From Octopus sinensis (taxonomy: Eukaryota): a DNA stretch of 64,000 nt. The stretch lies in assembly GCF_006345805.1 (NCBI RefSeq), contig NC_043003.1:21638001-21702000 (forward strand), given 5' to 3'. A program made the position numbers and the translations under genes. Positions 3,086-63,063 of the stretch are shown one piece after another; the stretch's first letter is position 1; the number at the start of each line of letters is the position of its first letter. The notes under the pieces are model-generated. The model did not search any database, was not told where the DNA came from, and saw only the letters and a list, made by a program, of their open reading frames with translations.

Positions 3086-3161
3086 AGGAATTAACTTTAA
3101 GGTAACCATTGGAGAGAGTCAGTGTTCAGTGAAGGATCTACTACGTGAACTATATGAAAAA
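3086..3161 (+). CDS. PHKA: PHKA exon (GINFKVTIGESQCSVKDLLRELYEK)
   Basis: Splice sites ttttttcag| and |gtaaga. Aligns by eye with PHKA 'ATVRELLTELYGK'. Phase 2 in, phase 0 out. Confidence 0.92.
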
Positions 3162-4997: not shown

Positions 4998-5075
4998 GCG
5001 GGTTACTGGAAGCAGTGGTGGCTGGTGAGACATACTGCTGGCATGTTGAAGAAGAGGATTGAAGATCTTGCTCTG
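4998..5075 (+). CDS. PHKA: PHKA exon (AGYWKQWWLVRHTAGMLKKRIEDLAL)
   Basis: Splice sites gtttcag| and |gtaact, 26 codons. Resembles PHKA '[26 protein letters not shown]'. Confidence 0.95.
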
Positions 5076-5224
5076 GTAACTATTCTTTTTCCAATATCTA
5101 TAAACATTCTAAAACTATCATGAAGTACAAGGAATACATGATGTTTATGAATGCACATATATACATTGAAGATCTGAGCCTGAACATGATTGCAGTCAAA
5201 TGTATGGAACCAGTAAAACTATCC

Positions 5225-6310
5225 TACTACAGACCAGGTTTGTAGTAAGGGTGGATGCTCTGAGAGTGTAGCTGCTAGAGAAAGAATAACCTGGGAAAAG
5301 TTCAGGGAGCTCCTACCTCTGCTGGCAACTAAGGGCCTCTCATTCTTGATGAAAGGTAGACTGTATGATGCATGTGTGTGAACTGCCATGCTACATGGCA
5401 GTGAAACATGGACCATGACTGCTGAGGACATGCGTAGGCTTGAAAGAAATAAAGCTAGTATGATCCGCTGGATGTGTAATGCCAGTGTGCATACACAACA
5501 GATTGTAAGCATGCTGAGAAAAATGTTGGACATAAGAAGCCTCAAATGACTGCTGGTATGGTCATGTGTTATGTATGGATGAGGAGAGCTGTGTGAGGAA
5601 ATGCCATATCCTAACTGTAAAAGGAACCTCTGGAAGAGGTAGGCCCAGGAAGACATGGAATGAGATGGTGAAGCATGACCTTTGAACGTTGGGCCTCACA
5701 GAGGCAATGACAGGAGACCGAGAACTTTGGAGATATGCTGTGACTGAGAAGACCCAACAACTAAAGTGAGATCATAGGCATGGCCAATGCCAGTGTTGCA
5801 TGTCTGGCCCATTTTAAAAGTACCCTTGATGCATTGGACAATATGATATGCTTGAAAAGACCTGGTGAGTCAAGTAAAACCAAAATCATAGCCATGGCCA
5901 GTGCCACGTGACTGGCTTCTGCACCAGTGGCATATAAGACACACTATCTGAACATGGTCAATGCCAGGTTCACCTGACTGGCTCCCATGCTGGTGGCACA
6001 TAAAAACCTCCATCTGAACGTGGTTGATGCCAGTGCCCCCTGACTGGCTCCTGTGCCAGTGGTACATAAAAAGCACCATCCAAATATGATTGATGCCAGG
6101 GCTGCCAGACTGGCTCATGTGCCGGTGGCACATAAAAAGCACCCACTACACTCTTGGAGTGGTTGGCATTAGGAAGGGCATCCAGCTGTAGAAACATTGC
6201 CAGATCAGATTGGAGCCTGGTGCAGCCCACTGGCTTTCCAGATCAGTCAAACCGTCCAACCCATGCCAGCATGGAAAACAGATGTTAAATAATGATGATT
6301 ATTATTATTC
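5225..6310 (+). mobile_element. 5'-truncated RTE-clade LINE: RT C-terminal region, 3' UTR with ~54-bp tandem repeats, (GAT/TAT)n tail
   Basis: Reads KGRLYDACV*TAMLHGSETWTMTAEDMRRLERNKASMIRWMCN with stops. Continues into repeat units and the tail ...aacccatgccagcatggaaaacagatgttaaataatgatg. Confidence 0.8.
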
Positions 6311-7081: not shown

Positions 7082-7158
7082 GCTGCCACAGATCTTTTGG
7101 TACGTCAGAAGCAGTTGTCTGTGGGTCTTCCTCCCGACCGAGAGAAGATCATCACCAG
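7082..7158 (+). CDS. PHKA: PHKA exon (AATDLLVRQKQLSVGLPPDREKIITS)
   Basis: Splice sites ttgtag| and |gtatgt. Matches PHKA '[26 protein letters not shown]'. Phase 0 in, phase 2 out. Confidence 0.96.
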
Positions 7159-7498
7159 GTATGTTCCAACAAGGTCATCTTTGTCTTTCGTCCTTCTAGA
7201 TCGAGTAAATAAAATACCAGTGAGGCACTAGGGGTCAATATAGTCAATTAATTCCCTCTCCTCAAAATTGTTGGCCATCTGTCTGATTAAGAAACAACTT
7301 TTATAGTTTAAATTGAAATTTGTGTTTGGATGTTGAGTTTTGGCTTTGTGTAGTCACATTGAATATTGTACCCCGAGATACACTGTCTATAAAAACAAAA
7401 AGCATAAACACAATGGACACAGCTGGAATGCTTTTAATGATAGTCTTATTCTGTCAAATGATGGCATTAGAAAGGGCATCCAGCCCTAGAAACCAAGC

Positions 7499-7985: not shown

Positions 7986-8064
7986 TCCCTTGCCACCAGA
8001 TGAACTTTCTGAAATGATATATGAATCTTGTGGAGAAGATCTGAGTACTGCTGCTTTGACACAG
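7986..8064 (+). CDS. PHKA: PHKA exon (PLPPDELSEMIYESCGEDLSTAALTQ)
   Basis: Splice sites atttcag| and |gtcagt. Matches '[26 protein letters not shown]'. Phase 2 in, phase 0 out. Confidence 0.96.
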
Positions 8065-10266: not shown

Positions 10267-10396
10267 GAATTGTTAATGTATTTGGCTATGTTTATCCGCA
10301 CTGAGCCGCAGCTTTTCAAAGAAATGTTACGTCTCCGTGTGGGGCTTATCATCCAGGTGATGGCCTCAGAATTGGCCAGGACTCTCAAATGTACAG
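10267..10396 (+). CDS. PHKA: PHKA exon ([43 protein letters not shown])
   Basis: Splice sites ttttctccag| and |gtacgc. Strongly resembles '[43 protein letters not shown]'. Confidence 0.97.
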
Positions 10397-12205: not shown

Positions 12206-12304
12206 GAGAAGAAGCTTCTGATCACCTGTTGAATTTGAGTCCATTTGAAATGAAAACACTTCTTCATCATATTCTTAGTGGGAAAGAATTTGTAATTAGC
12301 GCAG
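12206..12304 (+). CDS. PHKA: PHKA exon ([33 protein letters not shown])
   Basis: Acceptor tgaag| and donor G|gtgagt. Contains the conserved [11 protein letters not shown] motif. Phase 1 in, phase 1 out. Confidence 0.97.
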
Positions 12305-13098
12305 GTGAGTAAAACATTTCTTTTACAACTGTTTGTGTGTTGTTGTTGCTGTTTTTGTTGTTTTGAGCCTCAGGACAGTCCTGATTGGGCAAATCTATGA
12401 TCAATGGCATCGTAGCCATTTCTCTCCTATCATTCTTTCAGGCATTGCATATTTAAAACTACATTATCCAGTATGTCATTCCTTTTTCAAGTCAGTAGGG
12501 TGTCCTTTAAAGAAGACTTGGCTGCTTTTTCTAGCAGGCTAAAAAATCACTTAGAGAATCCCTGATCTGAAGTTGACACACTTTTAATCAGCATCTTGTA
12601 TGAGTAAGCTTGGTCCTTTGCATTATACATCCTACAGGCCAGATGCTGGCTTGGCTACAGAGGAATAATAACTGTGAAATGGTTTGATGGTGTGACATTA
12701 ATTGCAAACTATAAGTGTATGGACTGAGACTTGATGCACAAGTAACACTGAAGAGGCAGAAAATAATGTGCAATGGTTCTATTTAATGTGTCTGTGGATC
12801 CTGTATTGACTGTGTAATACACTACAGTTCAAAGTATGTTGTTATAAATGGCTTACTGTAAAGTAAGCCATTAGAATCATGTGAGTATATATATATATTT
12901 ATATATTTGTATACATATATGTGTGATGTGTGTGCATGCATGATGTTTGGTCTTTTGTATTTCATCAAATAGTAGTTTCATGTTAATTACTTCTATTATT
13001 GGTTAAGAATAAATTATTCACCTGATTAATTGAATAATTAATCTTTGAATTACCAGAATAATAACCAGCAGCTACAAAAACAAAACTATATATATATA

Positions 13099-13264: not shown

Positions 13265-14930
13265 TCGAGGTGTATTCCTGAAGTTTTAAAACTTTTGCAG
13301 GAGAACCATTTATTCATTTCAAAGAAGTACAAAAACTCTATTTTCCTTCAAAATAGGATCCTCTGACTCCAGTGCACTTGTAGTGCTCCAATCACTTTGT
13401 CCTCAAAAGTAATGGTGTCCAGGACTCTTTTCATAGCTCCCTTTGTTTTCTTGATATCTTCAAAACGATGGTCCTTGAAGTTCTCCTTCTGCTTGGGAAA
13501 TAACCAAAAGTCACAGAGAACAAGGGTGAGGAACAGTTTTGATACCCATTTCTGTCAAATAGTTGGTTACCAACATGGAATTGTGGACTGGTACCCATGC
13601 CACCAACCTGAATGGAAGGGCTCTGGCCTTTTGCAAAGAAATCTCTTCCTGAAATCCCTCAAAACCTTCACAAAGTACTCTTTTCGGCTGTCTGGCGAGA
13701 GAGAATTAAGTGGATGTAGATGATGTCCTTTTTAGTGGAAAAGGAGATCATCATGTGCTTCCTCATGGACTTCAATCTGGGAAACTGAGGATGTTTCTAT
13801 TGAGCACTCTGTCCCTTGGTCTCTGGGTCATAACAGTATATCCAACGATTACCAAAAATGCAAGTATTATTGGATTAGAGGAAATGAGCTCAACCATCTC
13901 GCTGCAGTCATCAATGTGTCTTTCCTTCTGTTCATCACTGAGCACCTTTACTCTTTTACTTGTTTCAGTCATTTGACTGCGGCCATGCTGGAGCACCGCC
14001 TTTAGTCGAGCAAATCAACCCCATCACTTGTTCTCTGTAAGCCTGGTACTTATTCTATCGGTTTCTTTTGCTGAACTGCTATGTCACGGGGATGTAAACA
14101 CATCAGCATCGGTTATCAAGCGATGTTGGGAGGACAAACACACACACACATATATATACATATATACGATGGGCTTCTTTCAGTTTCCGTTTACCAAATC
14201 CACTCACAAGGCTTTGGTTGGCCCGAGGCTATAGTAGAAGACACTTGCCCAAGGTACCACACTGTGGGAATGAACCTGAAACCATGTGGTTGGTAAGCAA
14301 GCTACTTACCACACAGCCACTCCTGCACCTATAACAATCTTGGGAGCAATCTTTGCACAGATTTTGTACATGATCAGATCCTCACGAATAATTCTGTGTA
14401 CAGTTGTTGACGCACCAACTCCAAACTGTATGCTTATTGTCTTTATAGACACATAACAATCTTCATCTAGAAAATTGCCAATTTTCTCAACCAATTCTAA
14501 TGCTCTGATGTCCCTCTTACTCCCACACTTTTCATTGTCTCTCACCTCTTCTCTACAATCCTCAAACCTCTTGTGCCAATGGAAAAACAGATGCTCAGCT
14601 CATACAAGTTAATCAATAAGCATTCTGGGGTATTTCATAATTTTCTGTAGCATTTTTACCCAGTTTAACACAAAACTTTATTGCATTACGAGCTTTGAAA
14701 TTCTTTTCATATCTTGTCTGCATTCTGCAGACTAGTCAGCTGTTACGATCAGTGTTTTTTAGGGTGTGTTCAAAGTGCTGTTGCAGCTGTCTCCTTCAAT
14801 TTGGAATAAAAAGTTAGCAGGTCAGCTTATAAGATGTATTATAATGATATAGTAAAAGTACAGTAATCTAGGACAGCTATAACTTCCTCTCCTAAAATAA
14901 TCTCAAAACTTCTGGAATGCACCTCATGTA
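13265..14930 (-). mobile_element. Decayed full-length mariner transposon interrupted by a SINE
   Basis: TIR cores gaggtgtattcctgaagtttt (13267) and gaggtgcattccagaagtttt (reverse complement of ~14906-14926). Transposase pieces ...HRIIREDLIMYKICAK and LTEMGIKTVPHP..CDFWLFPK. Length is about 1.3 kb after removing the SINE. Confidence 0.85.
13947..14330 (-). mobile_element. tRNA-derived SINE family A (CORE-like ccttgggcaagtg, internal (CA)/(TA) microsatellite), nested in the mariner
   Basis: Same sequence as copies at ~970-1350(+), 4075-4460(+), 6620-6925(+), 21508-22295(-), 42650-43055(+), 44195-44535(+), 56915-57310(-) and 59200-59630(+). Confidence 0.85.
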
Positions 14931-15142
14931 TAACACCTAGACTCACTCAGTTCCTACCATCATCAAAAAATGAATGCTGAAAGGGATAATGATATGTTTG
15001 TGTATTTGCATGTGTGTGTATTTGTATGTGCATCTGTTTTGTCTGTATATATGCACACATATGTATGTGTGTCTTTGTGTGTGTGTGTGTGTGTGTGTGT
15101 GGGCATTAGTTGATTAATTGCTTATATATTTTCTGCTCCCAG

Positions 15143-15160
15143 GAAAAAAAGACAAAAAGG
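15143..15160 (+). CDS. PHKA: Candidate 18-nt microexon of PHKA (GKKDKK)
   Basis: ttttctgctcccag|GAAAAAAAGACAAAAAGG|gtaagc. Consensus splice sites, length a multiple of 3, phase 1-1, open in the frame set by the upstream exon. No transcript evidence available. Confidence 0.75.
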
Positions 15161-15357
15161 GTAAGCTGACACTAAACTCCATATGCATTTATATATTTAT
15201 GTATATGTTTACATTTTTATATAACTTCTATTCTCAATTGTTTTTTCTCTCCCTTTGTATATGTAACACTGTTTTAATATTGATAAATATTTTAATTGAA
15301 TTTTCCCCAGTCTTACTTTTTTCTTAATATATTATTATGTTACTTATTTTGTCACCA

Positions 15358-15798
<441 letters not shown>

Positions 15799-17577: not shown

Positions 17578-17940
17578 TCATCATCATCATCATTTAGCGT
17601 CCGTTTTCCATGCTAGCATGGGTTGGACGGTTCTACTGGGGTCTGTGAAGCCAGTAGGCTTCATCAGGCCCAGTCAAATCTGGCAGTGTTTCTACGGCTG
17701 GATGCCCTTCCTAACGCCAACCACTCCGTGAGTGTAGTGGGTGCTTTTTACGTGCCACCCGCACTGGTGCCAGACAGAGCTGGCAAACGGCCACGAACGG
17801 ATGGTGCTTTTTATGTGCCACCGGCACGAGGGCCAGGCGAGGCTGGCAACGGACACGAAACGGGGCGGTGCTGGCAACGGTCGCGAAACGGAAAGTTCTC
17901 TTACATGCCACCGGCACTGGTAAATGACAATTGCATCCAG
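17578..17940 (-). mobile_element. RTE-LINE 3' end derivative (family C) with internal tandem repeats
   Basis: (ATC)n tail followed by the conserved block ttctacggctggatgcccttcctaacgccaacc. Related copies at 2395-2660(-), 8920-9090(+), 51470-51780(+), 53215-53530(-), 58578-58990(-) and 62635-63063(+). Confidence 0.8.
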
Positions 17941-33897: not shown

Positions 33898-33971
33898 ACA
33901 AACACAATGATGAAAGTATTGGGCGAGAAATTGTTCAGATTGGAAGGCGCCGTGAATCTGTATTTATTCAG
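33898..33971 (+). CDS. PHKA: Candidate alternative exon Y of PHKA (DKHNDESIGREIVQIGRRRESVFIQ)
   Basis: Polypyrimidine tract plus tataaag| acceptor and CAG|gtattt donor. 74 nt, phase 1 in and phase 0 out, bridging exons 12304 and 41132. Encodes an R-R-x-S motif in the position of the multiphosphorylation domain. Confidence 0.75.
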
Positions 33972-37380: not shown

Positions 37381-40069
37381 ACTTGGTCGGCTGTACGCAT
37401 GATGATATCTCCCATCAAGCAAGCATAGAGCAGCAAGAAGCAACTTCACTCTACATACATTACTTACTTAAGCACATCACTTCCTATGACATAAAGGCCA
37501 TTGATGGCTCCTTTTTCAGCTTTGCCAGTTGGCTCTGCAGATTCCTTTGGGATTTTGCTTCACTGCATCATATGTTTCCTTGGGAGAAGGCCTTCTTTCA
37601 GGTCTTGTCGGTTTTGAATTGTCATCAATGATTCTGTAACTTTGCATTTTTCTAGGTAGGGGTATTGGTCCTACACATACCCATTTTTACCTCTGGGAAG
37701 AGGTGGTCCATATTAGTCTGGCCTTTATTCTTTGACCTGACCGACATATGAGCTCCTTCACTAGCCTATCTCTCGAGGTCACTGAAGCACATGAGTTACC
37801 ACACTGCAGCAAGGACTGGACTTTGTATACATACAACTGTACATACAAAATTTTGTGCAGTATTATTGAACCTGGAGCTATGTGGTTGTCAAATGAACTT
37901 CTTAATCACGTGCCCAGATCTGATCTCATTTGTGTATGTAAAATCTAAATATATAGAAAAATATCAAAAAAGATGGAAAGCTAGTCCTAGTTAGGATTCA
38001 AACCCCACACCTTCTGCTAACCACCCTCATGCTTTTGCCACTTAAACTTACAACCCATTGCTATTTTCCCTTCAAAATAATCACATAAATTAATGTTGCT
38101 TATGTGATTTTTTTTTCAGCCAGGTACAATTTTTCCCCCCTTTCATGTTTTAATTTTATTATAACTGTTGTTTGTATTATTGAAACAGAGTTTTATCAAG
38201 AAGCTATTTCCAAACTAAATTTTGTATTTGTTTCTTTATTAAAATGTTCATTTTATGTTGATTATATCTTTCAATTAACTGGGATAGCATTAAGCATGTT
38301 ATACATGATCAGTTAGAACTTACCCACCCATCATTCCTGAGCTTCTGTCCCTAATTTCTCTTATATTTGCCTTCTTGTACCTTATGGATACACCCTGGCA
38401 CCTCATCACCATCATCTTTTCTATCCTTCCACTGGGGTAGCAATGTACCTCCTCTCCAGTAAGACACTTGCCCCTGCCTCTCTATCATACTTAAGCCACT
38501 CAACACCTGGCATAAAGCCACTTCCTTCAATATTACATTCTCCCTACACTCAATTGAAGGGCCTTGTCTTGCAAGTTATTTGGTGGTTGATGGCTTCCTT
38601 CTTGAGCCAGTGCCATGAAAAGAGCCTCTGGTATACTCTGTAAAGTGGTTAGCTTTATGAAGGCCATCCATCCATTGAAACCATACCAAACCAGTGCAGA
38701 CATTGGCGCTTGATACTGTTCTCCAGCTTATCAGATCCTGTCGAACCATCCAACCCATGCCAGCATGGAAAACAGATATTAAATAATGATGATGATGATG
38801 GTATATATGAGATTCTCTTGTATATATCATCGTCATCACCTTCATCATTTTACATTTACTTTCCCTTCTATTATGAGTTGGATGGCTTGTCTCTGAATCA
38901 CATTTTATTGGAAGTTACTGTTATCTTAGGCATAGCCAGAGGTGTGACATCCATTGATAGATACCCTTCTTATTACCAACCATTTTACAAGAGGTAACTG
39001 GATGCATTTCATCATAGCTCCAAGTTGTTGTGAGGTTGTCAAGTCCTCAAGTTCTCCCTCTCTACTCAGGGTTCATAGTGACCTTACTAGTGCTGGTGGT
39101 ACGGAAAAAGCATTCAGTACTCACAGTAAAGTGATTGGCATTAGGAAGGGCATCCAGCTGTAGAAACCGTGCTAAAGTAGATATGGAGCATGATGCAGTC
39201 CTTGAGCCCGCTGGAGCCTTCCTGTACCAGCATCGAACACGGACAATAAATATTGATAATGTTAAGGCTAATTGAGATTTTTCAGGAGTTTGCTCCCTTG
39301 TCCCTTCTGAGAATAAATTTTCATTAAAACTAATTATTTTTTTTTTTACCTCATTAGCACTTTAATTTCAGTTATTTAAAAGATCTTTTTATCCCTCATT
39401 TCATACATGGTAGACTGCACATGTAAAAAGTAAAAGTTCCCAATGTTACAATTATCATCACATTATTTTAGTATCCATTTCTCTATGCTTGTATGGATTA
39501 GACAAGTCTTTTCCAGTACATCATCAGAAAAAGATTCATCTACTTGTTCTGGCTCTTTATCATCTTTTCATTGAGGTTTAACCTTTTGTCATCCACCTTC
39601 ATTGCTTCTTATGCCTTCCTCAGTTTTCCTCTTCTTCAGGTTCTTTCCACTTGGATCTCCTGACACTTCCGTAACCAGATGTCATCTCCACTTCCATACA
39701 CATCATATGTCTGTCTCCTCTTTCACACACAGCATCTGATTCCTCTAATACAGTTTTTCTCTCTCAGCTTTTGTTTTTTTATAATTTTATTCTAACTAAT
39801 AAAGAAATTATAACCAAATTTATGTTTTGATTCAATAACTTCCTCTATTTTGACTTATAAATACATAGTTCACTTCTAGAGGGGAGAAATTGTATGAACA
39901 TTAAGTTTTATTAAAATAACTTATGAACTTATTAAAATAACTTATTATGTTCCATAATAACCATGTATTTATATATTGTTCAAAAATACTTAATATTTAA
40001 AAACGATAACCAAATATTTCTGTTATTGTTATCATTGTCATTGTTGTTGCTATTATCATTATTATTATT

Positions 40070-41131: not shown

Positions 41132-41299
41132 TCTGGACCGGCAATTGAGATAACTCAACCTGTGGATGATACTGAGGAACAAGGCGAAGAAGATGACGAC
41201 GATCGCCAGGGCCAGTGGTTACGACGACGGAGGCTAGATGGGGCCCTTAACAGAGTACCTGTTGGATTCTATGAGAAACTTTGGAAAATCTTACAAAGA
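41132..41299 (+). CDS. PHKA: PHKA exon ([56 protein letters not shown])
   Basis: Splice sites ttcttag| and |gtaagt. Contains the hallmark RQGQW(L/Q)[17 protein letters not shown]. Confidence 0.98.
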
Positions 41300-41650: not shown

Positions 41651-41704
41651 GTCGAAACCCTGTCTATTGCCAACAACACTCTGGAGACAATGCTAACCAG
41701 AGAA
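41651..41704 (+). CDS. PHKA: PHKA exon (VETLSIANNTLETMLTRE)
   Basis: Splice sites ctctgtag| and |gtaagg, 18 codons, phase 0-0. Same length and position as PHKA 'CHGLSVEGFVLPSSTTRE'. Confidence 0.93.
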
Positions 41705-42314: not shown

Positions 42315-42524
42315 ATGACATCTGGAGAGTTCAAATTCGCCCTGCAAGTCGAAACAGTTCTAAACATGATTCCACAGCCAGAGTACCGACAACTGATGGT
42401 AGAGGGTATGATAGTTCTAACCACACTGCTTGATGTTGACCCCAACTGTCGGATCAAACTTCACCGTACTATCTATATTGACAAAATTGTACAAGAGGCC
42501 AACCAGATTTACCTAAAAGAACAG
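42315..42524 (+). CDS. PHKA: PHKA exon ([30 protein letters not shown]...YLKEQ)
   Basis: Splice sites tacacag| and |gtcagt, 70 codons. Matches '[30 protein letters not shown]'. Confidence 0.98.
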
Positions 42525-44666: not shown

Positions 44667-44843
44667 AAAATGCCAGAAGACGTACAAAAGCAATTCATGG
44701 GAGCAGCTGGTATCTGCCAGCATTTTTATGACAGTGCACCAAGTGGACGATATGGCACACTATCTTACATGTGTCGAGCCCTAGCCATTATCCTTCACCT
44801 TCCTGTTGATTCAGACAATGGACTTGAGTGTGCTATTAGTTAA
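44667..44843 (+). CDS. PHKA: PHKA last coding exon (...[20 protein letters not shown]...GLECAIS*)
   Basis: Acceptor catttcag|. Contains the conserved YDSAPSGR(Y/F)GT motif and ends CAIS-TAA, a CaaX prenylation motif as in PhK alpha (CAMQ). Confidence 0.98.
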
Positions 44844-49900: not shown

Positions 49901-52239
49901 GAGCATGTGTTGGGTGCTTTTAAAGTACCACCAGCACAAGTACTCTAACATAGGACTGGCATGAATGCATTTAACGTGGCACCAGCACAGGAATCTTCCA
50001 TGAAAACATTTGTCAGATGCTTGGAAACAGGTGTGAGTTGGTCGCAGGAAAGTCATCAACCAAGAGAAAAATCTCCCTCAGTAAATTCTGATGACTGCAA
50101 CTGCGGAAAAATGGATGTTAAAATGGTGATGATGAATGAATATATTGTGTTCTTGGATTAGACACAGAGCTCTATTTAGTATATAGACCATTGGCTTGAA
50201 GCAGCTAGCTATTTCTCTTTACATCAAATGAAATTCTACATAGAAAAAGTAGCATACAACTAAGAACAGTGGATAGGCACGGGCATGTGTGTGTGGCTTA
50301 GAAACATGCCTTCCAACTGTGTGGTCTCAGGGTCAGTCTCATTGCACTGCACCTTGGTCAAGTGTCTTCCACAATAGCACTGGGTCAATCAAACCCTAGT
50401 GATTGGATTTGGTAGATAAAAACTGAAAGAAGCCTGTGGTGTGTATATCATCATTTAATTTCCATTTTCCATGCTGGCATGAGTTGGACAGTTTCACAGG
50501 AGCTGGAGAGTTACCTGGGCTCCATGTCTGTTTTGGCATGGTTTCTATGGCTGGATGCCCTTCCAAATGCCAACCACTTTATAGAGTGTACTGGGTGCTT
50601 TTACGTGGCACTGGCACAGGTGCTTATGGCACAAGGCCTGAAATTTTGGGGGAGGGTGCCAGTCAATTAGATCGACCCAGTACGCAACTGGTACCTATTT
50701 TTTTTCGACCCTGAAAGAATGAAAGGCAAAGTTGACCTCAGAACATAGAGACAAAATACCACTAAGGTGCTTATATTTAAAGAGATTTCTTCCAGCCTTT
50801 ACAACAAATCTCTAAAATTATATCATAATTCTTCACCACTACTACCTCATTTATATATATATATATATATATATATATCGCTTTTGGATTGCAAGATTCT
50901 TTACGTAACTTTGTGTGTTGAAGCACATTCTGTTGTGTCTAGGGAGAGTCATTTTCTTTTTGTGCCTTATAATTTAACACATTCACCAGTAAAATTTCCA
51001 CTTATTTCTTATTTTCCTAAAATTTTTGTTAAGATGCATATATATATATACCAATATGCTGTTGAGCACTCATTCTCAATATTCAATATTGGTGTAAAAA
51101 CAAACCGTGGAAAAAAATATGTATATATCATAATAATAATAAACATTGTGTACAGTGCTCAGGTCCGCTTTCCATGCTAGCATGGGTTGGACGTTAAACG
51201 ATGATGATATATACATATTTTTTCCACGGTTTGTTTTTACACCAATATTGAATAGTGAGAATGAGTGCTCAACACCACATTGGTGGATAAAAATTCTTTA
51301 CTCATTGGTCAATTGCTGATAATTGTTGGCATGAACCCAACGGTTGCCTTGTTAAGCCACAAATAAAGAATATTTATCTGCTAATGCGATGTTGAGCAGT
51401 CACTCTCACTGTTCTATATTGGTGTATGTGTGTATTTGCATCATCCTTTAACATCTGTTTTCCATGCTCGTGCCGGTAGCACATAAAAGCACCATCTGTT
51501 CGTGTCCGTTGCCAGCCTTGCCTGGCCCCCGTGCCGGTGGCACGTAAAAACACCATCCGTTTGTGGCCATTTGCCAGCTCTGTCTGGCACCTGTGCAGGT
51601 GGCACGTAAAAAGCACCCACTACACTCTTCGAGTGGTTGGCGTTAGGAAGGACATCCAGCCGTAGAAACACTGCCAAATCTGACTGGGCCTGATGAAGCC
51701 TTCCGGCTTCACAGACCCCAGTTAAACCGTCCAACCCATGCTAGCATGGAAAACGGACGCTAAATGATGATGATGATGATGTGTGAGTTGGACTGTTTCA
51801 CCAGAGCTGCACCAAGTTTCTGGTTTGATTTGGCTTGGTTTCTATGGCTGGATGCCCTTCCACTCCAGGAGTGTGTGCTGGGTGCTTTTAAAGTACCAGC
51901 AGCACAAGTACTCTAACACAGGACTGGCATGAATGCATTTTACGTGGCACCAGCACAGGAATCTTGCAAACCAATTCTCTTCACTAAGGAATGTGACTTT
52001 CCAGAGGATGTGATGAATGGTTGTGTAAAAACATCACCTTGCTTGGAAACGAGTGAGGGTTACAATCAGGCTGTACAAAAACATTTTCAACAATTTGTTT
52101 GACCCATACAAGCATGGAAAAGTGAACATTAAATATTGATAATAAAGCAATAGTTGTGATACCACAGGTACCATGCTGTTACAGGTCCAAGCTGTTTTAA
52201 CATCAATAATGAAATACTAACAATATTTTTTTAAAAAAG

Positions 52240-54198: not shown

Positions 54199-55103
54199 TA
54201 CACGGTCTGATCAATAAGTATCCGAACTGTTGCCATAGTAACAAAGCTAAAGCACGCAGAGTGAAGCTGCTTGGCACAGATAGACCTTGAATTCTGTTGC
54301 ACATGCACACAAAGTTTTAATGTTCTAGCTCATTTCCACTGTTTACAGCAGTGCTTGGAAGGAAGGTGTATAGCATGTGATCGTCGCATTGACCATGACA
54401 CAGAAAGTTATCATGGCGATACCTGCTCAGAGACCTACGCAAAGTTGGAGAAAATATATGGAGAAGAATGTATGAGCTGCACACAAGTGTATGAGTGGTT
54501 CTGACATTTCCAAGATATCCAAAGAAAATGTCGATATTGATGAACATTCTGGAAGACCCACAACTAGCAGAAGTGAGAAAAACATTGCAGATGTATGAGC
54601 AGCTGTGAGGAGAAATCATCACATCACCAACAGTGAGTTATCAGAGGAGGTGCAGATTAATTATGGTTCAGTTGAGTCCGTTATCACTGAGGATTTGGGT
54701 ATGAGGTGGGTGTCTGCCAAGTTTGTGGTAAAACTGCTTTCAGCTGACCAAAAAGACACTCAGGTTTCAGTTGCACAAGATCTCGTTGATTGTGTCAAGA
54801 ACGGTGAAAACTTTTTGAAAACTCTGCATAGGCCTCTGAGAAGGTATCGCCAAGCTTTTTGGCAACATTTGATGCAGCAGATTCTCTGCTCAACTTACTT
54901 TGTCATGGTCAATGCGACGATCACATGCTACACATCTTCCTTCCAAGCATTGCAGTAAAAAATAGAAGTAAACTAGAACGTTAATACTTAGTCCGCATGT
55001 ACAGCAGAGTTCAAGGTCAATCTGCACCAAATGGCTTCACTCTGCGTGCTTTAGCTTCATTACTATGGCAACAGTCCAGATACTTATTGATCAGACGACA
55101 GTA
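54199..55103. mobile_element. Mariner derivative built from two inverted 5' halves
   Basis: Terminal gtctgatcaataagtatc inverted repeats extend more than 200 bp inward. Transposase N-terminal peptides occur on both strands (GDTCSETYAKL...VSAKFVVKLL on +; VEQRICCIKCCQKLGDTFSEAYA on -). Confidence 0.85.
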
Positions 55104-57310: not shown

Positions 57311-57458
57311 TTATGTCATGTTAATTTATGTTTCAAAAGCTAGTTTAATGACAACACAGTTATCTTACTAAATTTTTTCTTTCTTTCTTACAATTAATTG
57401 AAACAAAAGCCATGCATTTCAAAAGGAAAAGGTTAACAAAATAGTTAATAGAAGTTAC

Positions 57459-57563
57459 CTTTCTGCAATGTTGGTAAATAAAACCTTCGACATCGACACT
57501 GACAGCACTTGTACATTCATCTAGAATAGCAAACTGGGGTTTGTGATAGAAGAGACGAGCCAT
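57459..57563 (-). CDS. ABCD3: ABCD3 exon with Walker B/D-loop ([35 protein letters not shown])
   Basis: Splice sites tttctccag| and |gtaact. Nearly identical to the ABCD3 sequence as recalled. Confidence 0.98.
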
Positions 57564-59360
57564 CTGGAGAAAATGAAAAAAAGAAATAACATGATTACAT
57601 TATAAGTTCAACTAATGCATGCCACTCATACACATTTGTGTGTGCGTTATATAATTTTGAACAGCTTGATTGACTTGTCATATATATATATCTATATATC
57701 CAGGACACTTAGAATTAAACGATGATCCTCATCACCACCCCCAACAACCACCACTATCACCAGCATCAACATTACCACCAACAGCAGCATTTTTACATCT
57801 ACTTTTCCATGCTGGTATTCATTGGACAGATTATCAAAGACTGTGTCAGTCCTTAGTACTACTGCCATCTGTGTGTGTATGTGTGAGGGAACATGTTTCA
57901 TTTGTACTTTCATTTTCAGCATATTTTCTGCAACTCTTTCTACCATTAACCATTTTACAGTTGGCTGGATGCATTTTATCATGGGACTTGCATTAGAGAG
58001 GCAGTTATATCCTCAATAAAAAAACTAAAAGGACTCTCAGCCCAATGTTGTTTCTAAATATTTGCAAACCACTCTACATGGTGTACTAGGTGCACCAACA
58101 CTAGAGGTGTTGTCTTTTCCACAGAAAGACTAAAGTGGCCTCTCTGCCCTACATTGCATCCATTCATTTACCAATCATTTTACAGGGTATCGTGGATGCA
58201 TGTTGTTGTGACATCAGCATTAGAGAGGTTATCTTGTTCCAGGCAAGATTAAAGTTGTCTCTTATCATCCATTTATTTGCCAGCATCAGAGAGTTGTCTC
58301 ATCCTTGACAAGTCAAAGGGAGATTGATGAAAGAATTTAAGAGGGTGGGTAATACAGAGACAGTGATGGAAGTGAATAGGATATTGAGAGTAAAGAAAGA
58401 GAGAACAAGTGATGAACAGCTACACAACGATTGTTGGGAAGGAGATTGGGCAGAAACAGCATGAGAGGAAGAAGGGAGAGAAAAACAAGAGGGAGGCAGG
58501 GTAAAAGAATAGAAGAGAGAAGTGATGAATAGCAATGAAAATGGACAGTGATAAGAGAGTGAGAGCGGTAGACAGTGATCATCATCATCATCATCATTTA
58601 ACATCCATTGTCCATGCTGGTATGGATTGGATGGTTTAACTGGGCTGGCATGCTGGAAGGCTGTGCCAGACTCCAGTCTGATTAGGCATAGTTTTTCTAC
58701 AGCTGGATGCCCTTCCTAATGCCAACCACTCCGAGAGTGTAATGGGTACTTTTACATGCCACCAGCACAGGTACCATTTGCATGACACCAGTACCTGCCA
58801 CGACTGCGATTTTGCTCAGCTTGATGAGTCTTCTTCTCAAGCATGGCGTAATGCCAAAGGACTTGGTCATTGCCTCCGTGAGGCCCAACACTTAAAAGGA
58901 ACTCAGCCACTTTGCCTCCATGAGGCCCAATGCTCGAAAGGAACTCAGCCAGCTTGCCTCCAACACACACATGAACATTAATAATGAGTGATGGGGAGGG
59001 AAATGAGAGTCAGCAATACAGAATAGATTATGGTAAGTTGAAATATGTGTGTTGGAAGGGTAGGTGTAGAGGAGAGGGGTGTGTAATGTCATGGATTGGA
59101 TAAACTATCAGAGACTGAATTGGATCAGTTTTTACTCAGAATTACTGCTCTTAGATGGATTAAGGGCCATGCTTCACTCACACCTCCCATTTTTGGGAAG
59201 TTGGTGCAGGAGTGGCTGTGTGCTAAGAAGTTTGCTTCCCAACCACATGGTTCCAAGTTCAGAACCTTGAGAAAGTGCCTTCTACTATAGCTTTGGACCA
59301 AGCAAAGCACTATGAGTGGATTTGGTAGACAGAAACTAAAAGAAACCCATTGCGTGTATG

Positions 59361-59416
<56 letters not shown>

Positions 59417-59788
59417 AGTGTGTGTGTCTTTGTTTGTCCCCCACTGCTACTTGACAACTAGTGTTGGTATCTTTACGTCCCCATAACTTAGTGGTTCAGC
59501 TAAAGAAACTGATAGAATAAGTACCAGACGTCCAAAAAAAAGTACTGGAGCTGGTTCATTCAACAAAAATTCTTCAAAGCAGTGCCCCAGTATGGCCACA
59601 GTCTAATGATTGAAACTAGTAAAAGGATAAATAAACACTAATTGTTATTACAGAGCACTAATTGTAGTACTAATTGGAACATGAATTTTACATTTCAAGA
59701 TTAAAGATTTGAAAATTAAAATACAAAATAACGAGAACAATTATAACTAAATTTAATTTTGAATTTATAATTAAATTTTTTTACTTAC

Positions 59789-59833
59789 AGCCATTCTTTG
59801 TTTTTCACCTCCACTGAGCACATCCATCCAATC
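59789..59833 (-). CDS. ABCD3: ABCD3 exon with ABC signature (DWMDVLSGGEKQRMA)
   Basis: Splice sites tctattcag| and |gtaagt. Contains the LSGGEKQR signature motif. Confidence 0.97.
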
Positions 59834-60089
59834 CTGAATAGAAATAAGAGTTCAGCTGCTTTATAACTATATTGTGTTTGTGAATTTATACAGGGTGATT
59901 AAATCTAAGATTCATTTATTTATAACAGTGTTTCCCAAACTTTCTCAGGTTGCCACCCGTTTAGCACCCGGGCCACATTCCTAGTGTCCCCCCACTCCAC
60001 TCACCACCACAAGCATAGACCACTTTCTGCAACAAATTCAAAACAACTGTATTTCACAAATAAAACTTAATCTAATTAACTCATTATTT

Positions 60090-60490
60090 TGTTCAGTTCT
60101 ATATTTAAGAGATGAGTAATTATGTACATTATTTCACTATTTACATTCGACAGATATTCGTCCTCATCTTGTTTGTTGATAACACAACATTTTGGCTGAT
60201 ATACCCTCCAGCCTTCTTCAGGTGTCTTTACTATGCCATATGCCCGTGGGCATATGGCATAATGGTTAAGAGTGCAGGCTACTAACTCCAAGATTCCGAG
60301 TTCAATTCCAAGCAGTGACCTGAACAATAACAAATAATAATAATAACAACAACATCAAAAAATACCTTAGGAATGAGAACCCAGGTTTGAAATTTCCCCC
60401 AAGACACCTGAAGAAGGCTGGAGGGTATATCAGCCGAAATGTGTTAACAACAAACAAGATGGGGACAAATATCCGTCAAATGTAAATAAT
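60090..60490. mobile_element. Head-to-head pair of a tRNA-headed element with a hammerhead-like/Penelope-type tail
   Basis: A box tggcataatgg and B box gagttcaattcc at 60255-60309. Tail cctgaagaaggctg-gagggtatat-cagccgaaa at 60407-60439. An inverted, internally deleted copy lies at 60090-60245. Confidence 0.7.
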
Positions 60491-60530
60491 GATCATTATT
60501 TTGTTGTTTTACATCCATCGCCCTCTTTTG

Positions 60531-60650
60531 ACCACCCCATTATCATTCCCTTTGGCCACTCCATTATTGCCCCCTTTGGCCACCCTGTTATCGCCCCCAT
60601 TGGCCACCCCATTACCACCCTCTTTGGCCACTCCATTATCGCCCCCCACC
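60531..60650. repeat. ~24-bp minisatellite, 5 units (ttggccaccccattatcgcccccc) inside the hAT element
   Basis: Read directly from the sequence. Confidence 0.85.
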
Positions 60651-60820
60651 CCTGGATCTTTCCAACCCCACCCCCCCAGGGGAGCAGTACTGCACACTTC
60701 GAGAACCACTGATTTATAAGATTTACAATACAAGGGGTCAAAAACATAAAATTTCTTACAAGCAGAGATTAAAATGTTACTAATAGGTTACAAAAAAATG
60801 ATGCAAAACAGTCAACAAAC

Positions 60821-60871
60821 CTTCACTGACTCCCAACCACCTTCTCTCTCCAGTAAATACCCTAACTGAAC
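60821..60871 (-). CDS. ABCD3: ABCD3 exon (VQLGYLLEREGGWESVK)
   Basis: Splice sites gtttttcag| and |gtttgt. Matches 'VQLGHILEREGGWDSVQ'. Confidence 0.95.
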
Positions 60872-61908
60872 CTGAAAAACAAAAGAAAAATCATTTAACC
60901 TGTTAACTGCCAAATTTTTTTATTCATATTTTTTGGCTTTGCCTAGTGTCTCAGGAGTTAAGATAATATATAGTATTTATATTTTCTGCATAAATGAGTT
61001 ATTTTGGAAATTATAATAATTCTTTCAAAAAGTCCCAAATGGAGATCACTGGAAAAAAGCATATTTATCCTTTTTCTATTCAATTGCAATAATAAACAAA
61101 GTTTTTTGAAACTATAGTATCAAATGCGAATATGTATGAAATATCAATGAATGATATAGATGAAAAATGCAAAAACAAAAAAAAAAGTTTTCAAAATAGT
61201 CAATATTTTTGTAGTTCAAAAATTGTGATTTATGACATAAAATGTCCTCTAGAATTAGCCAGAGTTAATAATGATAAACTTTAACTACTAAATGTCATTA
61301 AACACACCTCTGCAAATGCAATGTACATAAGCAATTCACTTTAAATACAATTAACAACCGGCGATGAGACTGTTTTTAGCAGATCCCCAAATAGGGCTCA
61401 TGGCAGGCAATGAGTTAATGTCTAACTAGAAAAAAAAAATTATATAGGTGCAGGTATGATTATAGGTACAGGCATGGTTGTGTGGTTAAGTTTGCTTCCC
61501 AACCACATGGTTTCAGGTTCAGTCTCACAGCACAATAACTTGGGTAAGCATTTTCTATTATAGCTCTAGGTGGACCAAAGCCTTACAAGTGAATTTAGGA
61601 GACAGAAACTGAGAGGTGTGTGTGTGTGCACATGTGTCTGTGTGCTTGTTTATATTTGTGCTCTATGCTGCACGCCTTTCAAAGACATGAAATAAGAGGT
61701 TCATTTCTTGAAAACCAGGTAAGAAAGGGGTAATGATAGGAAGGGTATCCATTAAAACAATGCCTCAATAATATATTCACCTAACCCATGCCAGCATGGA
61801 AAAACAGATGTGAAACAAACAAGTGAAGAATAAGAAATATTCTTGCACCATTATTTTCAATGAGAAGTTCAGACAAGACAGAAAGAAAGTGGTGGAAAAC
61901 AAAATTAC

Positions 61909-62022
61909 CTTTTCCAAAATATCTTCCAGTTGAGCATCATTAATGTTCTTTGCCCTTTGATCTACATGAACATCTGGGTATATCATTTGTTCTCGGAGTG
62001 AACCAACAGCCATATAGGGTCG
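61909..62022 (-). CDS. ABCD3: ABCD3 exon ([17 protein letters not shown]...LEDILEK)
   Basis: Splice sites tttttgtag| and |gtaatt, 38 codons. Confidence 0.96.
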
Positions 62023-62115
62023 CTACAAAAATAAAGAAAGGATAATTTATTAGACTCAATTGGGACTCACAACAGTATAAAACAGCAGATGATGATGATA
62101 TATTATTCAACTTAC

Positions 62116-62181
62116 CTGAGGGACGTAAAAGAGTTTCCGTTTATCTGGTTTAATTAATGTTCCACCAAACAATGGCCACAG
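62116..62181 (-). CDS. ABCD3: ABCD3 exon (LWPLFGGTLIKPDKRKLFYVPQ)
   Basis: Splice sites attacag| and |gtaagt, 22 codons. Matches human 'LWPLFGGRLTKPERGKLFYVPQ'. Confidence 0.97.
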
Positions 62182-62474
62182 CTGTAATAATAACGATGAT
62201 AATATTATTAGTGTTATTGTTATATCAAGCAGGTCAAACAAGCTCAAAGGGGCTCTCTTGCTAGCTCAGCTCAAGTCTTTAGGTAAAGCACTTTATTACT
62301 CTGGCTGTCAATTAGTCTACCAAAAATACAGGTGCTGCTCCAAACAACTTTATGATAAGAATGTGATTTGTTATTTCTTGATTGAGCAAGCAGAAGGTAA
62401 ACCCATGGGAACACATAAAAAGAAATAACTGAAATAATTAGAAACAAAAAAAAGTGAAAAGAAGGAAAACTTAC

Positions 62475-62552
62475 TTCTCCAAGAGTACGGAACAAAGAAC
62501 TTTTTCCACATCCATTTGGACCACATACCAAAACATTCATGCCAGAATGTAC
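62475..62552 (-). CDS. ABCD3: ABCD3/PMP70 exon with Walker A (VHSGMNVLVCGPNGCGKSSLFRTLGE)
   Basis: Splice sites ttttctctag| and |gtaagt. GPNGCGKSSLFR is the ABCD-family Walker A motif. Confidence 0.97.
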
Positions 62553-62634: not shown

Positions 62635-63063
62635 ATCGAAGTCGATCGACATCAATGGAAATTGCAGCTGTGATACCAGTGCCAGTGGCACGTAAGCGAA
62701 CCATCTGATCGTGGCCGTTGCCAGCGCCTCCCCGACTGGCCTCCGTGCCGGTGGCACGTAAAAAGCACCATCCGATCGTGGCCGTTACCAGCCTCGCCTG
62801 GCCCCTGTGCCGGTGGCACATAAAAAGCACCACCCGACCGTGGCCGTTTGCCAGCCCTGTCTGGCACCTGTGCGGGTGGCACGTAAAAAGCACCCACTAC
62901 ACTCACGGAGTGGTTGGCGTTAGGAAGGGCATCCAGCCGTAGAAACATTGCCAGATCAGACTGGGCCTGGTGCAGCCTCCTGGCTTCCCAGACCCCAGTT
63001 GAACCGTCCAACCCATGCTAGCATGGAAAGCGGACGCTAAATGATGATGATGATGATGATGAT
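62635..63063 (+). mobile_element. RTE-LINE 3' end derivative (family C) with 4 tandem units
   Basis: Units containing gtgccggtggcacgtaaaaagcacc; ends with (GAT)n. Confidence 0.8.

What the first reader, a model, noticed from the sequence alone, without database searches (positions are those of the whole stretch)
15125..15170. 18-nt lysine-rich microexon with a UGC motif in the polypyrimidine tract
Seen: ttttcTGCtcccag|GAAAAAAAGACAAAAAGG|gtaagc is a symmetric phase-1 microexon adding G-K-K-D-K-K. It has a (GT)n tract just upstream and a large (TACA)n tract about 200 nt downstream. Established knowledge: neural microexons controlled by SRRM3/4-type eMIC proteins typically carry UGC close to the 3' splice site. 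Inference: a neural-specific basic patch inserted beside the phosphorylation domain. Automated annotation would probably miss it.
Basis: partly seen in the sequence, partly recalled or inferred. Interest (0 to 1): 0.75.

Follow-up and report, generated by a model that had tools for sequence, protein, structure and literature searches.

The report
Candidate 18-nt microexon in phosphorylase kinase alpha
An 18-base stretch with very good splice signals sits in a long intron of a mollusc phosphorylase-kinase alpha gene and would add six charged residues to the enzyme's flexible phosphorylation loop, but no RNA or cross-species data could be reached to show that it is ever spliced in or that it is brain-specific.

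Summary
The sequence is exactly as described: ttttcTGCtcccag|GAAAAAAAGACAAAAAGG|gtaagc at 15129-15166, with the exon at 15143-15160. The host gene is the phosphorylase kinase regulatory alpha subunit (PHKA). The upstream exon (12206-12304, ...SGKEFVISA) ends in phase 1, so inclusion would add GKKDKK in frame.

The next exon is not 41132-41299, which starts in phase 0. I predict a 74-nt exon at 33898-33971 (DKHNDESIGREIVQIGRRRESVFIQ, with a PKA-type RRRES). The insert would therefore lie beside the phosphorylation segment.

With a generic splice-site matrix, this is the best 3-30 nt AG...GT pair in 128 kb that is not anchored on a known exon. About 2% of simulated introns give an in-frame equivalent. 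The 18-mer is single copy in the window.

The link to eMIC/SRRM splicing regulators is weak. UGC occurs within 25 nt upstream of 30% of all AGs here, and the AG-exclusion zone is short at 31 nt. The flanking microsatellites are common in the window.

No transcript or orthologous cephalopod intron could be obtained. Verdict: a plausible, unverified cassette microexon (about 45% real, about 15% neural and eMIC-dependent). If real, it is a new member of a known kind. Modest interest.

The parts
15143..15160 (+). Candidate 18-nt cassette microexon GAAAAAAAGACAAAAAGG. It is phase 1 to phase 1 and would encode G-K-K-D-K-K.
   Evidence: Sequence read and coordinates. Splice scores are acceptor 6.5 and donor 9.8 bits. 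Rarity is shown. It is single copy in the window.
15129..15142 (+). 3' splice region: a short pyrimidine tract ttttcTGCtccc carrying UGC at 15134-15136, then CAG.
   Evidence: Pyrimidine fraction is 0.78 over -20..-3. TGC lies at -9 and -24. The AG-exclusion zone is 31 nt.
15114..15118 (+). Putative branch point UUAAU (branch A at 15117), about 25 nt upstream of the AG.
   Evidence: Read from the sequence against the yUnAy consensus. Inferred, not tested.
15161..15166 (+). 5' splice site GTAAGC, preceded by exon-terminal AGG.
   Evidence: Only 0.4% of + strand GTs score as high.
12206..12304 (+). Upstream PHKA exon (99 nt, phase 1 to 1) encoding (G)[32 protein letters not shown]. Its donor CAG|GTGAGT is very strong.
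   Evidence: PDB 8jfk_M alignment, tblastn with Batillaria KAK7498731.1 and scores. The same donor position and phase is seen in annelid and insect loci.
33898..33971 (+). Predicted downstream exon (74 nt, phase 1 to 0) encoding DKHNDESIGREIVQIGRRRESVFIQ, with a PKA-type RRRES site.
   Evidence: An exon is needed to reconcile the phase-1 end at 12304 with the phase-0 start at 41132. This is the only hydrophilic phase 1-to-0 candidate with a long pyrimidine tract. 'QIG' aligns with insect 'SQIG'. Inferred; no homolog was found.
41132..41299 (+). PHKA exon encoding [56 protein letters not shown]. It carries an acidic run and the conserved segment that matches the predicted calmodulin-binding region of human PHKA1.
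   Evidence: PMC11950179 gives residues 1046-1086 as the predicted CaM-binding region.
14994..15101 (+). TG-rich microsatellite including (GT)13 at 15076-15101, upstream of the candidate.
   Evidence: Predicted to pair with the downstream TACA array.
15357..15795 (+). (TACA/TATA)n microsatellite, about 110 copies of a 4-nt unit, starting 197 nt downstream of the candidate.

Best explanation
The 18-mer is a candidate frame-preserving cassette microexon of the phosphorylase kinase regulatory alpha subunit (PHKA) gene. It lies 2.8 kb into the 21.6-kb gap between the exon ending ...SGKEFVISA (12304) and a predicted 74-nt exon (33898-33971) that carries an RRRES PKA-type site.

Its signals are canonical: a UUAAU branch point about 25 nt upstream, a short pyrimidine tract, CAG|G, and AGG|GTAAG. 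The spliceosome could therefore use it.

Inclusion would turn ...VISA-DKHNDES... into ...VISA-GKKDKK-DKHNDES.... That adds net charge +3 to the disordered multiphosphorylation loop, 18 residues before the RRRES serine. It is also about 40 residues before an acidic run and the conserved [19 protein letters not shown] segment.

Shown: the sequence, the reading phase, the host gene, the quality and rarity of the signals, and a vertebrate PHKA1 sequence with a short in-frame gap in the same loop. Inferred: that it is actually spliced, the downstream exon, and any effect of the basic patch (for example on charge patterning of the loop or on kinase or calmodulin access). Tissue specificity is unknown.
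For: - Host gene: PDB PHKA1 hit with E 4e-24. The joined exons hit PF19292 at 2.9e-33 and the end of PF00723.
- Signal strength: acceptor 6.5 and donor 9.8 bits fall inside or above the range of the gene's 10 other scored exons (acceptor 1.4-9.6, donor 5.2-13.3).
- Rarity: it is the best 3-30 nt AG...GT pair in 128 kb not anchored on a known exon. Only 6 of 300 simulated introns give an in-frame, open equivalent.
- Frame: 18 nt is frame-neutral, and both the upstream exon end and the predicted downstream exon start are phase 1.
- Not a repeat copy within the window.
- Spacing: the 2.8-kb distance from exon 12304 is close to the 0.8-2.3 kb introns upstream in this gene.
[quoted passage not shown] 1993, cited in PMC3518106 and PMC11950179). 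A vertebrate PHKA1 sequence lacks exactly VEFRRLSISAESQ (human 1012-1024, 39 nt) relative to PDB 8jfk_M.
- Tolerance of inserts: the loop is flexible and invisible in cryo-EM and unalignable between phyla.
Against: - No transcript, annotated isoform or orthologous intron could be obtained, so there is no evidence of use or conservation (exact-ORF look-ups).
- The exon is A-rich low complexity in a 30% GC stretch between microsatellites, where such strings arise easily.
- Having no stop codon is uninformative, because the 18-mer contains no T.
- 18-nt exons are normally too short for exon definition without a dedicated activator.
- High-scoring false donors exist next to real acceptors (4998-5024 here; termite L061 14118-14145).
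- The splice matrices are generic values from memory.
- Annelid and insect PHKA loci show no comparable K-rich microexon, so there is no deep conservation.
Confidence: 0.45

Rival explanations
1. Chance pseudo-exon. An A-rich intronic string happens to lie between a good acceptor-like and a good donor-like sequence, and is never spliced in or only at noise level.
For: - There is no expression or conservation evidence.
- The context is low-complexity, AT-rich and full of microsatellites.
- 4% of simulated introns contain an equally good pair, and 2% an in-frame one. The prior that a given intron holds a real microexon is also only a few percent, so the posterior odds are near even.
- Decoy pairs scoring 14-15 bits occur elsewhere on the + strand (7200-7219, 12442-12470, 39070-39098).
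Against: It outscores every decoy on both strands. It is frame-preserving. It lies in the one loop of the protein where short inserts are tolerated, with a vertebrate sequence gap as precedent.
Confidence: 0.45
2. One reading: a neuron-specific microexon whose inclusion depends on an eMIC-domain Srrm234/SRRM3/4-type protein that recognises the UGC next to the 3' splice site.
For: - UGC lies at -9 to -7 inside the pyrimidine tract, and the 5' splice site is strong. These are features listed for SRRM3/4 targets.
- UGC is found in 74-79% of SRRM3/4-dependent human microexons.
- The eMIC domain is reported to date from the bilaterian ancestor.
Against: - UGC has little discriminating power here: 30% of all AGs and 3 of 11 other acceptors in the gene have one within 25 nt.
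- The AG-exclusion zone is 31 nt, the second shortest of 12. The branch point is at the normal 25 nt, not the long distance described.
- The 3' splice region is not weak, whereas eMIC targets in flies have very weak ones.
- eMIC target sets are almost completely rewired between phyla, so vertebrate rules transfer only loosely.
- PHKA is a glycogen-metabolism gene, and the splice variant cited for mammals (alpha') is a slow-muscle isoform.
Confidence: 0.15
3. The site is not a coding cassette but a recursive-splicing or ratchet site that helps remove the long intron in steps.
For: It lies in a long gap (21.6 kb to the next predicted exon) and has a strong acceptor closely followed by a strong donor.
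Against: A recursive site needs AG|GTAAGT, so that a 5' splice site is rebuilt after the first step. Here the acceptor is followed by GAAAAA, and the junction GCAG|GAAAAA is not a donor.
Confidence: 0.02

Closest known systems
Short in-frame cassette in the multiphosphorylation domain of vertebrate PHKA1/PHKA2 (Wullrich et al. 1993; human PHKA1 residues 1012-1024, VEFRRLSISAESQ)
   Same: Same gene family and the same disordered loop between ...SGKEF... and RQGQW.... Both are short, frame-preserving inserts that change the neighbourhood of the PKA-site serine.
   Different: The vertebrate cassette is 39 nt and carries the PKA site itself (Ser1018). The candidate is 18 nt, carries no serine, and sits upstream of the predicted RRRES exon. 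There is no sequence homology between them. The vertebrate isoform is taken here from one database sequence and the cited literature; the octopus-type exon has no such support.
Neural microexons dependent on eMIC-domain proteins (SRRM3/SRRM4, invertebrate Srrm234)
   Same: Length 3-27 nt, a multiple of 3, a charged surface or disordered insert, UGC close to the 3' splice site, and a strong 5' splice site.
   Different: The AG-exclusion zone is short, the branch-point distance is normal and the 3' splice site is not weak. UGC is not above background. Neural inclusion and regulator dependence are untested.
Intronic pseudo-exons (decoy splice-site pairs in long introns)
   Same: It lies in a long AT-rich intron, is low complexity, and has no supporting RNA or conservation data.
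   Different: It scores above all other decoys in 128 kb and preserves the reading frame.

Membership tests
PHKA (phosphorylase kinase regulatory alpha subunit) gene, as host | C-terminal KPBB_C domain and the end of the glucoamylase-like domain, with the conserved [19 protein letters not shown] segment | tested here: met
   PF19292 at E 2.9e-33 and PF00723 at E 1.9e-14 on the joined exons. Human PHKA1 (8jfk_M) scores E 4e-24 against PHKB at 1.4e-07.
Alternative cassette microexon | 3-27/30 nt, bounded by AG and GT with usable splice signals | tested here: met
   18 nt, with acceptor 6.5 and donor 9.8 bits, within or above the range of the gene's real exons.
Alternative cassette microexon | Frame-preserving and compatible with the phase of the neighbouring exons | tested here: met
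   Exon 12206-12304 ends in phase 1. 18 nt keeps phase 1. The predicted exon 33898-33971 starts in phase 1.
Alternative cassette microexon | Present in some transcripts and absent from others | not testable with these tools
   No transcript-derived or annotated protein of this or a close species is in the protein collections. The search with the junction peptide found only a genomic ORF.
Alternative cassette microexon | Conservation of the exon and its splice sites in related species | not testable with these tools
   Only two short contigs of related molluscs were reachable (L001, L002), and neither reaches this intron. The metagenome scan for the degenerate exon pattern gave 0 hits. Annelid and insect loci have no counterpart.
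eMIC/SRRM3/4-dependent neural microexon | UGC between the branch point or pyrimidine tract and the AG | tested here: met
   TGC at -9 and -24. It is not specific: 30% of all AGs and 3 of 11 other acceptors of the gene also have one.
eMIC/SRRM3/4-dependent neural microexon | Long AG-exclusion zone or long branch-point-to-AG distance, and a weak 3' splice region | tested here: not met
   The AG-exclusion zone is 31 nt, the second shortest of 12 acceptors. UUAAU lies about 25 nt upstream. The acceptor score is above the gene's median.
eMIC/SRRM3/4-dependent neural microexon | Strong 5' splice site (mammalian targets) | tested here: met
   AGG|GTAAGC scores 9.8 bits, in the top 0.4% of GTs.
eMIC/SRRM3/4-dependent neural microexon | Neural-enriched inclusion that depends on the eMIC protein | not testable with these tools
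   No RNA-seq or perturbation data are accessible.
Recursive splice site | Acceptor directly followed by a GTAAGT-like sequence, so that a 5' splice site is regenerated | tested here: not met
   The acceptor is followed by GAAAAA.

The most novel reading that the evidence does not exclude
A lineage-specific, neuron-enriched microexon places a lysine-rich patch in the regulatory multiphosphorylation loop of phosphorylase kinase. Its inclusion is set by an eMIC-type factor acting on the UGC, and perhaps modulated by pairing of the complementary TG-rich and TACA-rich microsatellites that bracket it. That would link the neural microexon programme of a mollusc to the control of glycogen breakdown.
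Probability: 0.12. Interest if true: 0.5.

Novelty: new member of a known kind. Interest (0 to 1): 0.3.

Why it matters
If the exon is real, alternative splicing would target the multiphosphorylation loop of PHKA in a mollusc as well as in vertebrates, using a different, non-homologous cassette. That would be a small case of a recurrent splicing hotspot. It would also give a concrete insert to test, a basic patch next to a PKA-type site and an acidic run, for effects on the phosphorylation or calmodulin sensitivity of phosphorylase kinase. If it is also neural, it would add a data point on microexon programmes outside vertebrates and insects. If it is not spliced, it is a useful reminder that sequence-only microexon calls need RNA support. 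This window and a termite locus both contain convincing look-alikes made of a real acceptor plus an internal GT.

Tried and rejected
1. Looking for transcripts or annotated isoforms. Two word-indexed protein searches and one exhaustive representative search returned only genomic ORF fragments. The junction and phospho-exon query had 3 candidates in 5.8 billion proteins, and the only hit was a genomic ORF of a related mollusc (P0230). So there is no RNA evidence either way.

2. Fetching orthologous introns.
- Logan contigs L001 (1223 bp) and L002 (1149 bp) cover only exons 41132 and 10267/12206 of relatives. Their exons are 74-80% identical at the DNA level and their introns do not align.
- Exact-ORF look-ups with three ORFs from the window (two in the long interval, one in an upstream intron) found nothing.

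3. A metagenome scan for the degenerate pattern YAGGAAARAARGAYAARAARGGTRAG gave 0 hits.

4. Eighty PHKA loci from metagenome contigs (annelid, insect and other hosts) were scanned between the two flanking exons. The donor position and phase of exon 12304 are conserved, but there is no K-rich microexon. A 28-nt 'exon' in termite L061 proved to be a real acceptor plus an internal GT.

5. Idea that the microexon arose by duplication of the start of exon 33898 (shared AAAGACAAA). This is rejected: the 9-mer occurs 5 times in the window against 1.7 expected.

6. Idea that Batillaria 'SKKDKV' is homologous to GKKDKK. The loop does not align between taxa, so this was not pursued.

7. Repeat origin. 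No other copy of 15107-15180 is in the window. A genome-wide test was not possible.

8. Recursive splice site. Rejected on the sequence.

9. The (GT)n and (TACA)n tracts as specific regulatory signals. Such arrays are frequent in the window. Only their mutual complementarity is notable.

Full report
**What is there**

The string ttttcTGCtcccag|GAAAAAAAGACAAAAAGG|gtaagc is present once in the window, at 15129-15166.
- The candidate exon is 15143-15160.
- The acceptor AG is at 15141-15142 and the donor GTAAGC at 15161-15166.
- UGC lies at 15134-15136.
- A (GT)13 run at 15076-15101 ends a TG-rich tract that begins at 14994.
- A (TACA/TATA)n array of about 110 units starts at 15357.

**Host gene and exon map**

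The + strand carries the C-terminal half of the phosphorylase kinase regulatory alpha subunit (PHKA).
- All database relatives carry Pfam PF19292.
- The joined exons hit PF19292 at 2.9e-33 and the end of PF00723.

I used a gastropod protein (Batillaria KAK7498731.1) and inspection of splice sites. The resulting exons are:

| Exon | Note |
|---|---|
| ...-823 | start not mapped |
| 3086-3161 | |
| 4998-5075 | |
| 7082-7158 | |
| 7986-8064 | |
| 10267-10396 | |
| 12206-12304 | ends ...SGKEFVISA plus one base G (phase 1) |
| 41132-41299 | starts in phase 0 |
| 41651-41704 | 54 nt, missed by tblastn |
| 42315-42524 | |
| 44667-44843 | last exon, with stop |

The organism was not identified. The closest annotated relative is a gastropod. 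Two unnamed Logan contigs (L001, L002) share 88-94% protein identity in exons but have unalignable introns.

**Phase**

Exon 12206-12304 ends after ...SGKEFVISA with one extra base G, so it ends in phase 1.

Exon 41132-41299 must start in phase 0. An in-frame TAG that doubles as its acceptor lies immediately upstream, and the same arrangement is seen in the relative L001.

At least one more exon, of length 2 mod 3, must therefore lie in the 28.8-kb interval. Among phase-1 candidates with usable splice sites, only 33898-33971 looks like part of this protein:
- It is 74 nt, with a long pyrimidine tract and donor CAG|GTATTT.
- It encodes DKHNDESIGREIVQIGRRRESVFIQ.
- RRRES is a PKA-type site, and QIG aligns with insect SQIG.

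This exon is inferred, because no homolog was found. With it, the two isoforms read ...VISA-DKHNDES...RRRESVFIQ-SGPAIE... and ...VISA-GKKDKK-DKHNDES.... The downstream partner, however, is not the 41132-41299 exon.

**Is it more than chance?**

I scored splice sites with generic metazoan matrices set from memory, which is a stated limitation.
- The candidate scores acceptor 6.5 bits and donor 9.8 bits.
- The gene's other exons score acceptor 1.4-9.6 and donor 5.2-13.3.
- Only 0.7% of AGs and 0.4% of GTs on the strand reach the candidate's values.
- Among all AG...GT pairs 3-30 nt apart on both strands of the window (128 kb), it is the best that does not reuse a known exon boundary. The minus strand has none within 2 bits of it.
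- In 300 order-2 Markov simulations of the 28.8-kb interval, 13 contained an equally good pair. Six contained one that was also a multiple of three and open.

The 18-mer has no T, so being open adds nothing; only the length counts. The region is single copy in the window.

The chance expectation is thus about 0.02-0.04. That is the same order as the prior probability that a given long intron holds a real microexon, so the odds are roughly even. Two look-alikes show the danger of sequence-only calls: 4998-5024 in this gene and 14118-14145 in termite locus L061. Each is a real acceptor followed by an internal GT inside a longer exon. That escape is not open here, because reading past 15160 hits TGA at once.

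**The eMIC link**

Published descriptions of eMIC/SRRM3/4 targets list these features:
- UGC close to the 3' splice site, present in 74-79% of human targets;
- a long AG-exclusion zone or long branch-point-to-AG distance;
- long UCUC-rich pyrimidine tracts;
- a strong branch point;
- a weak 3' splice region;
- in mammals, a strong 5' splice site.

The candidate has UGC at -9 (and -24) and a strong donor. However:
- TGC occurs within 25 nt upstream of 30% of all AGs on this strand, and of 3 of the 11 other acceptors of the gene.
- The AG-exclusion zone is 31 nt, the second shortest of the 12 acceptors.
- A normal UUAAU branch point lies about 25 nt upstream.
- The pyrimidine tract is only 12 nt, and the acceptor is not weak.

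The same papers say target sets are almost fully rewired between phyla. The eMIC or neural reading is therefore possible but rests on almost nothing specific.

**Attempts to get direct evidence**

- No transcript-derived or annotated protein of this or a close species exists in the searchable collections.
- The query that contained the microexon junction and the predicted exon found a single genomic ORF of a relative (P0230).
- Exact-ORF look-ups with ORFs from the window failed.
- A metagenome scan for a codon-degenerate version of the exon with its splice sites found nothing.
- PHKA loci of annelid and insect hosts in metagenome contigs keep the donor position and phase of the 12304 exon. 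They show no comparable microexon between the flanking exons.
- No paper in the library links PHKA to a microexon or lists octopus microexons by gene.

**Context from the literature and from sequences**

In mammals the alpha-subunit phosphorylation sites cluster in an 80-residue flexible segment. It is not seen by cryo-EM and lies next to a predicted calmodulin-binding region at residues 1046-1086 (PMC11950179). The octopus-type exon 41132-41299 matches that region.

[quoted passage not shown] 1993, cited). One vertebrate PHKA1 sequence in the database lacks exactly VEFRRLSISAESQ (residues 1012-1024, including Ser1018) relative to the PDB chain.

A short in-frame cassette in this loop therefore has a precedent. 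The loop is unalignable between phyla, so any octopus cassette would be analogous rather than homologous.

**Mechanism proposed**

If used, the exon is recognised through canonical signals. Because it is only 18 nt long, it probably needs an activator, whose identity is unknown. Inclusion adds GKKDKK (net charge +3) 18 residues before the RRRES serine and about 40 residues before the acidic run [13 protein letters not shown]. This changes the charge pattern of a disordered regulatory loop. Effects on PKA access, autophosphorylation or calmodulin binding are speculation.

The TG-rich tract upstream and the TACA-rich array downstream are complementary. They are predicted to pair and loop out the roughly 255 nt that hold the exon (MFE -127 kcal/mol, z = -5.6 against shuffles). 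Such pairing could influence inclusion. Microsatellites of both kinds are common here, however, and the effect is untested.

**Verdict**

| Reading | Probability |
|---|---|
| Genuine spliced cassette microexon | about 0.45 |
| Chance pseudo-exon | about 0.45 |
| Neural and eMIC-dependent (a subset of the first) | about 0.15 |

- Observation: confirmed.
- Interpretation: partly supported.
- Novelty, if real: a new member of a known kind.
- Interest: modest (0.3).

A junction k-mer search in RNA-seq would settle the question in minutes.

Noticed in passing
window 57363-62552, minus strand: Exons of an ABCD3-like (PMP70-type) peroxisomal ABC half-transporter, convergent with PHKA. They include the Walker A exon (VLVCGPNGCGKSS) and the signature/Walker B exon. 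The best PDB hits are ABCD3 and plant ABCD1, at E about 1e-37.
   Followed up: partly
window 41651-41704 (+): A 54-nt PHKA exon (VETLSIANNTLETMLTRE, phase 0 to 0) that tblastn with a gastropod protein did not detect. It was found by reading the three frames. It shows that small exons of this gene are easily missed.
   Followed up: yes
window 33898-33971 (+): A predicted 74-nt exon with a PKA-type RRRES site, needed to restore the reading phase between 12304 and 41132. No homolog was found, so it rests on phase, splice signals and composition.
   Followed up: partly
window 14994-15101 and 15357-15450 (+): The TG-rich and TACA-rich microsatellites that bracket the candidate exon are complementary. 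They are predicted to form a long imperfect duplex that loops out about 255 nt (z = -5.6 against dinucleotide shuffles).
   Followed up: partly
window 5897-6143, 17740-17859, 51469-51617, 62679-62894: A dispersed family of tandem 62-66-nt units (GTGCCGGTGGCACGTAAAAA...), with overlapping ORFs reading 'GAFYVPPA...'. It is probably a SINE or other transposable-element family.
   Followed up: no
window 4998-5024 (+); L061 14118-14145: Two convincing microexon look-alikes that are in fact a real acceptor followed by an internal GT inside a longer exon. One is in this gene and one in a termite-gut-metagenome PHKA locus.
   Followed up: yes
window 12304; L030, L036, L061, L004, L046, L052: The donor after ...SGKEF-x-x-S-x is at the same position and phase (a split codon starting with G) in the mollusc window, annelid-type loci and insect loci. 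This is an ancient intron position at the entrance to the variable phosphorylation loop.
   Followed up: partly
window 5217-5690 (+) and 54599-54955 (+): Open frames that look like transposable-element remnants: a reverse-transcriptase-tail-like TWTMTAEDMRRLERN... and a mariner-like N-terminal HTH. Pfam gave no hit at E 0.01 or better, so these labels are from memory only.
   Followed up: partly
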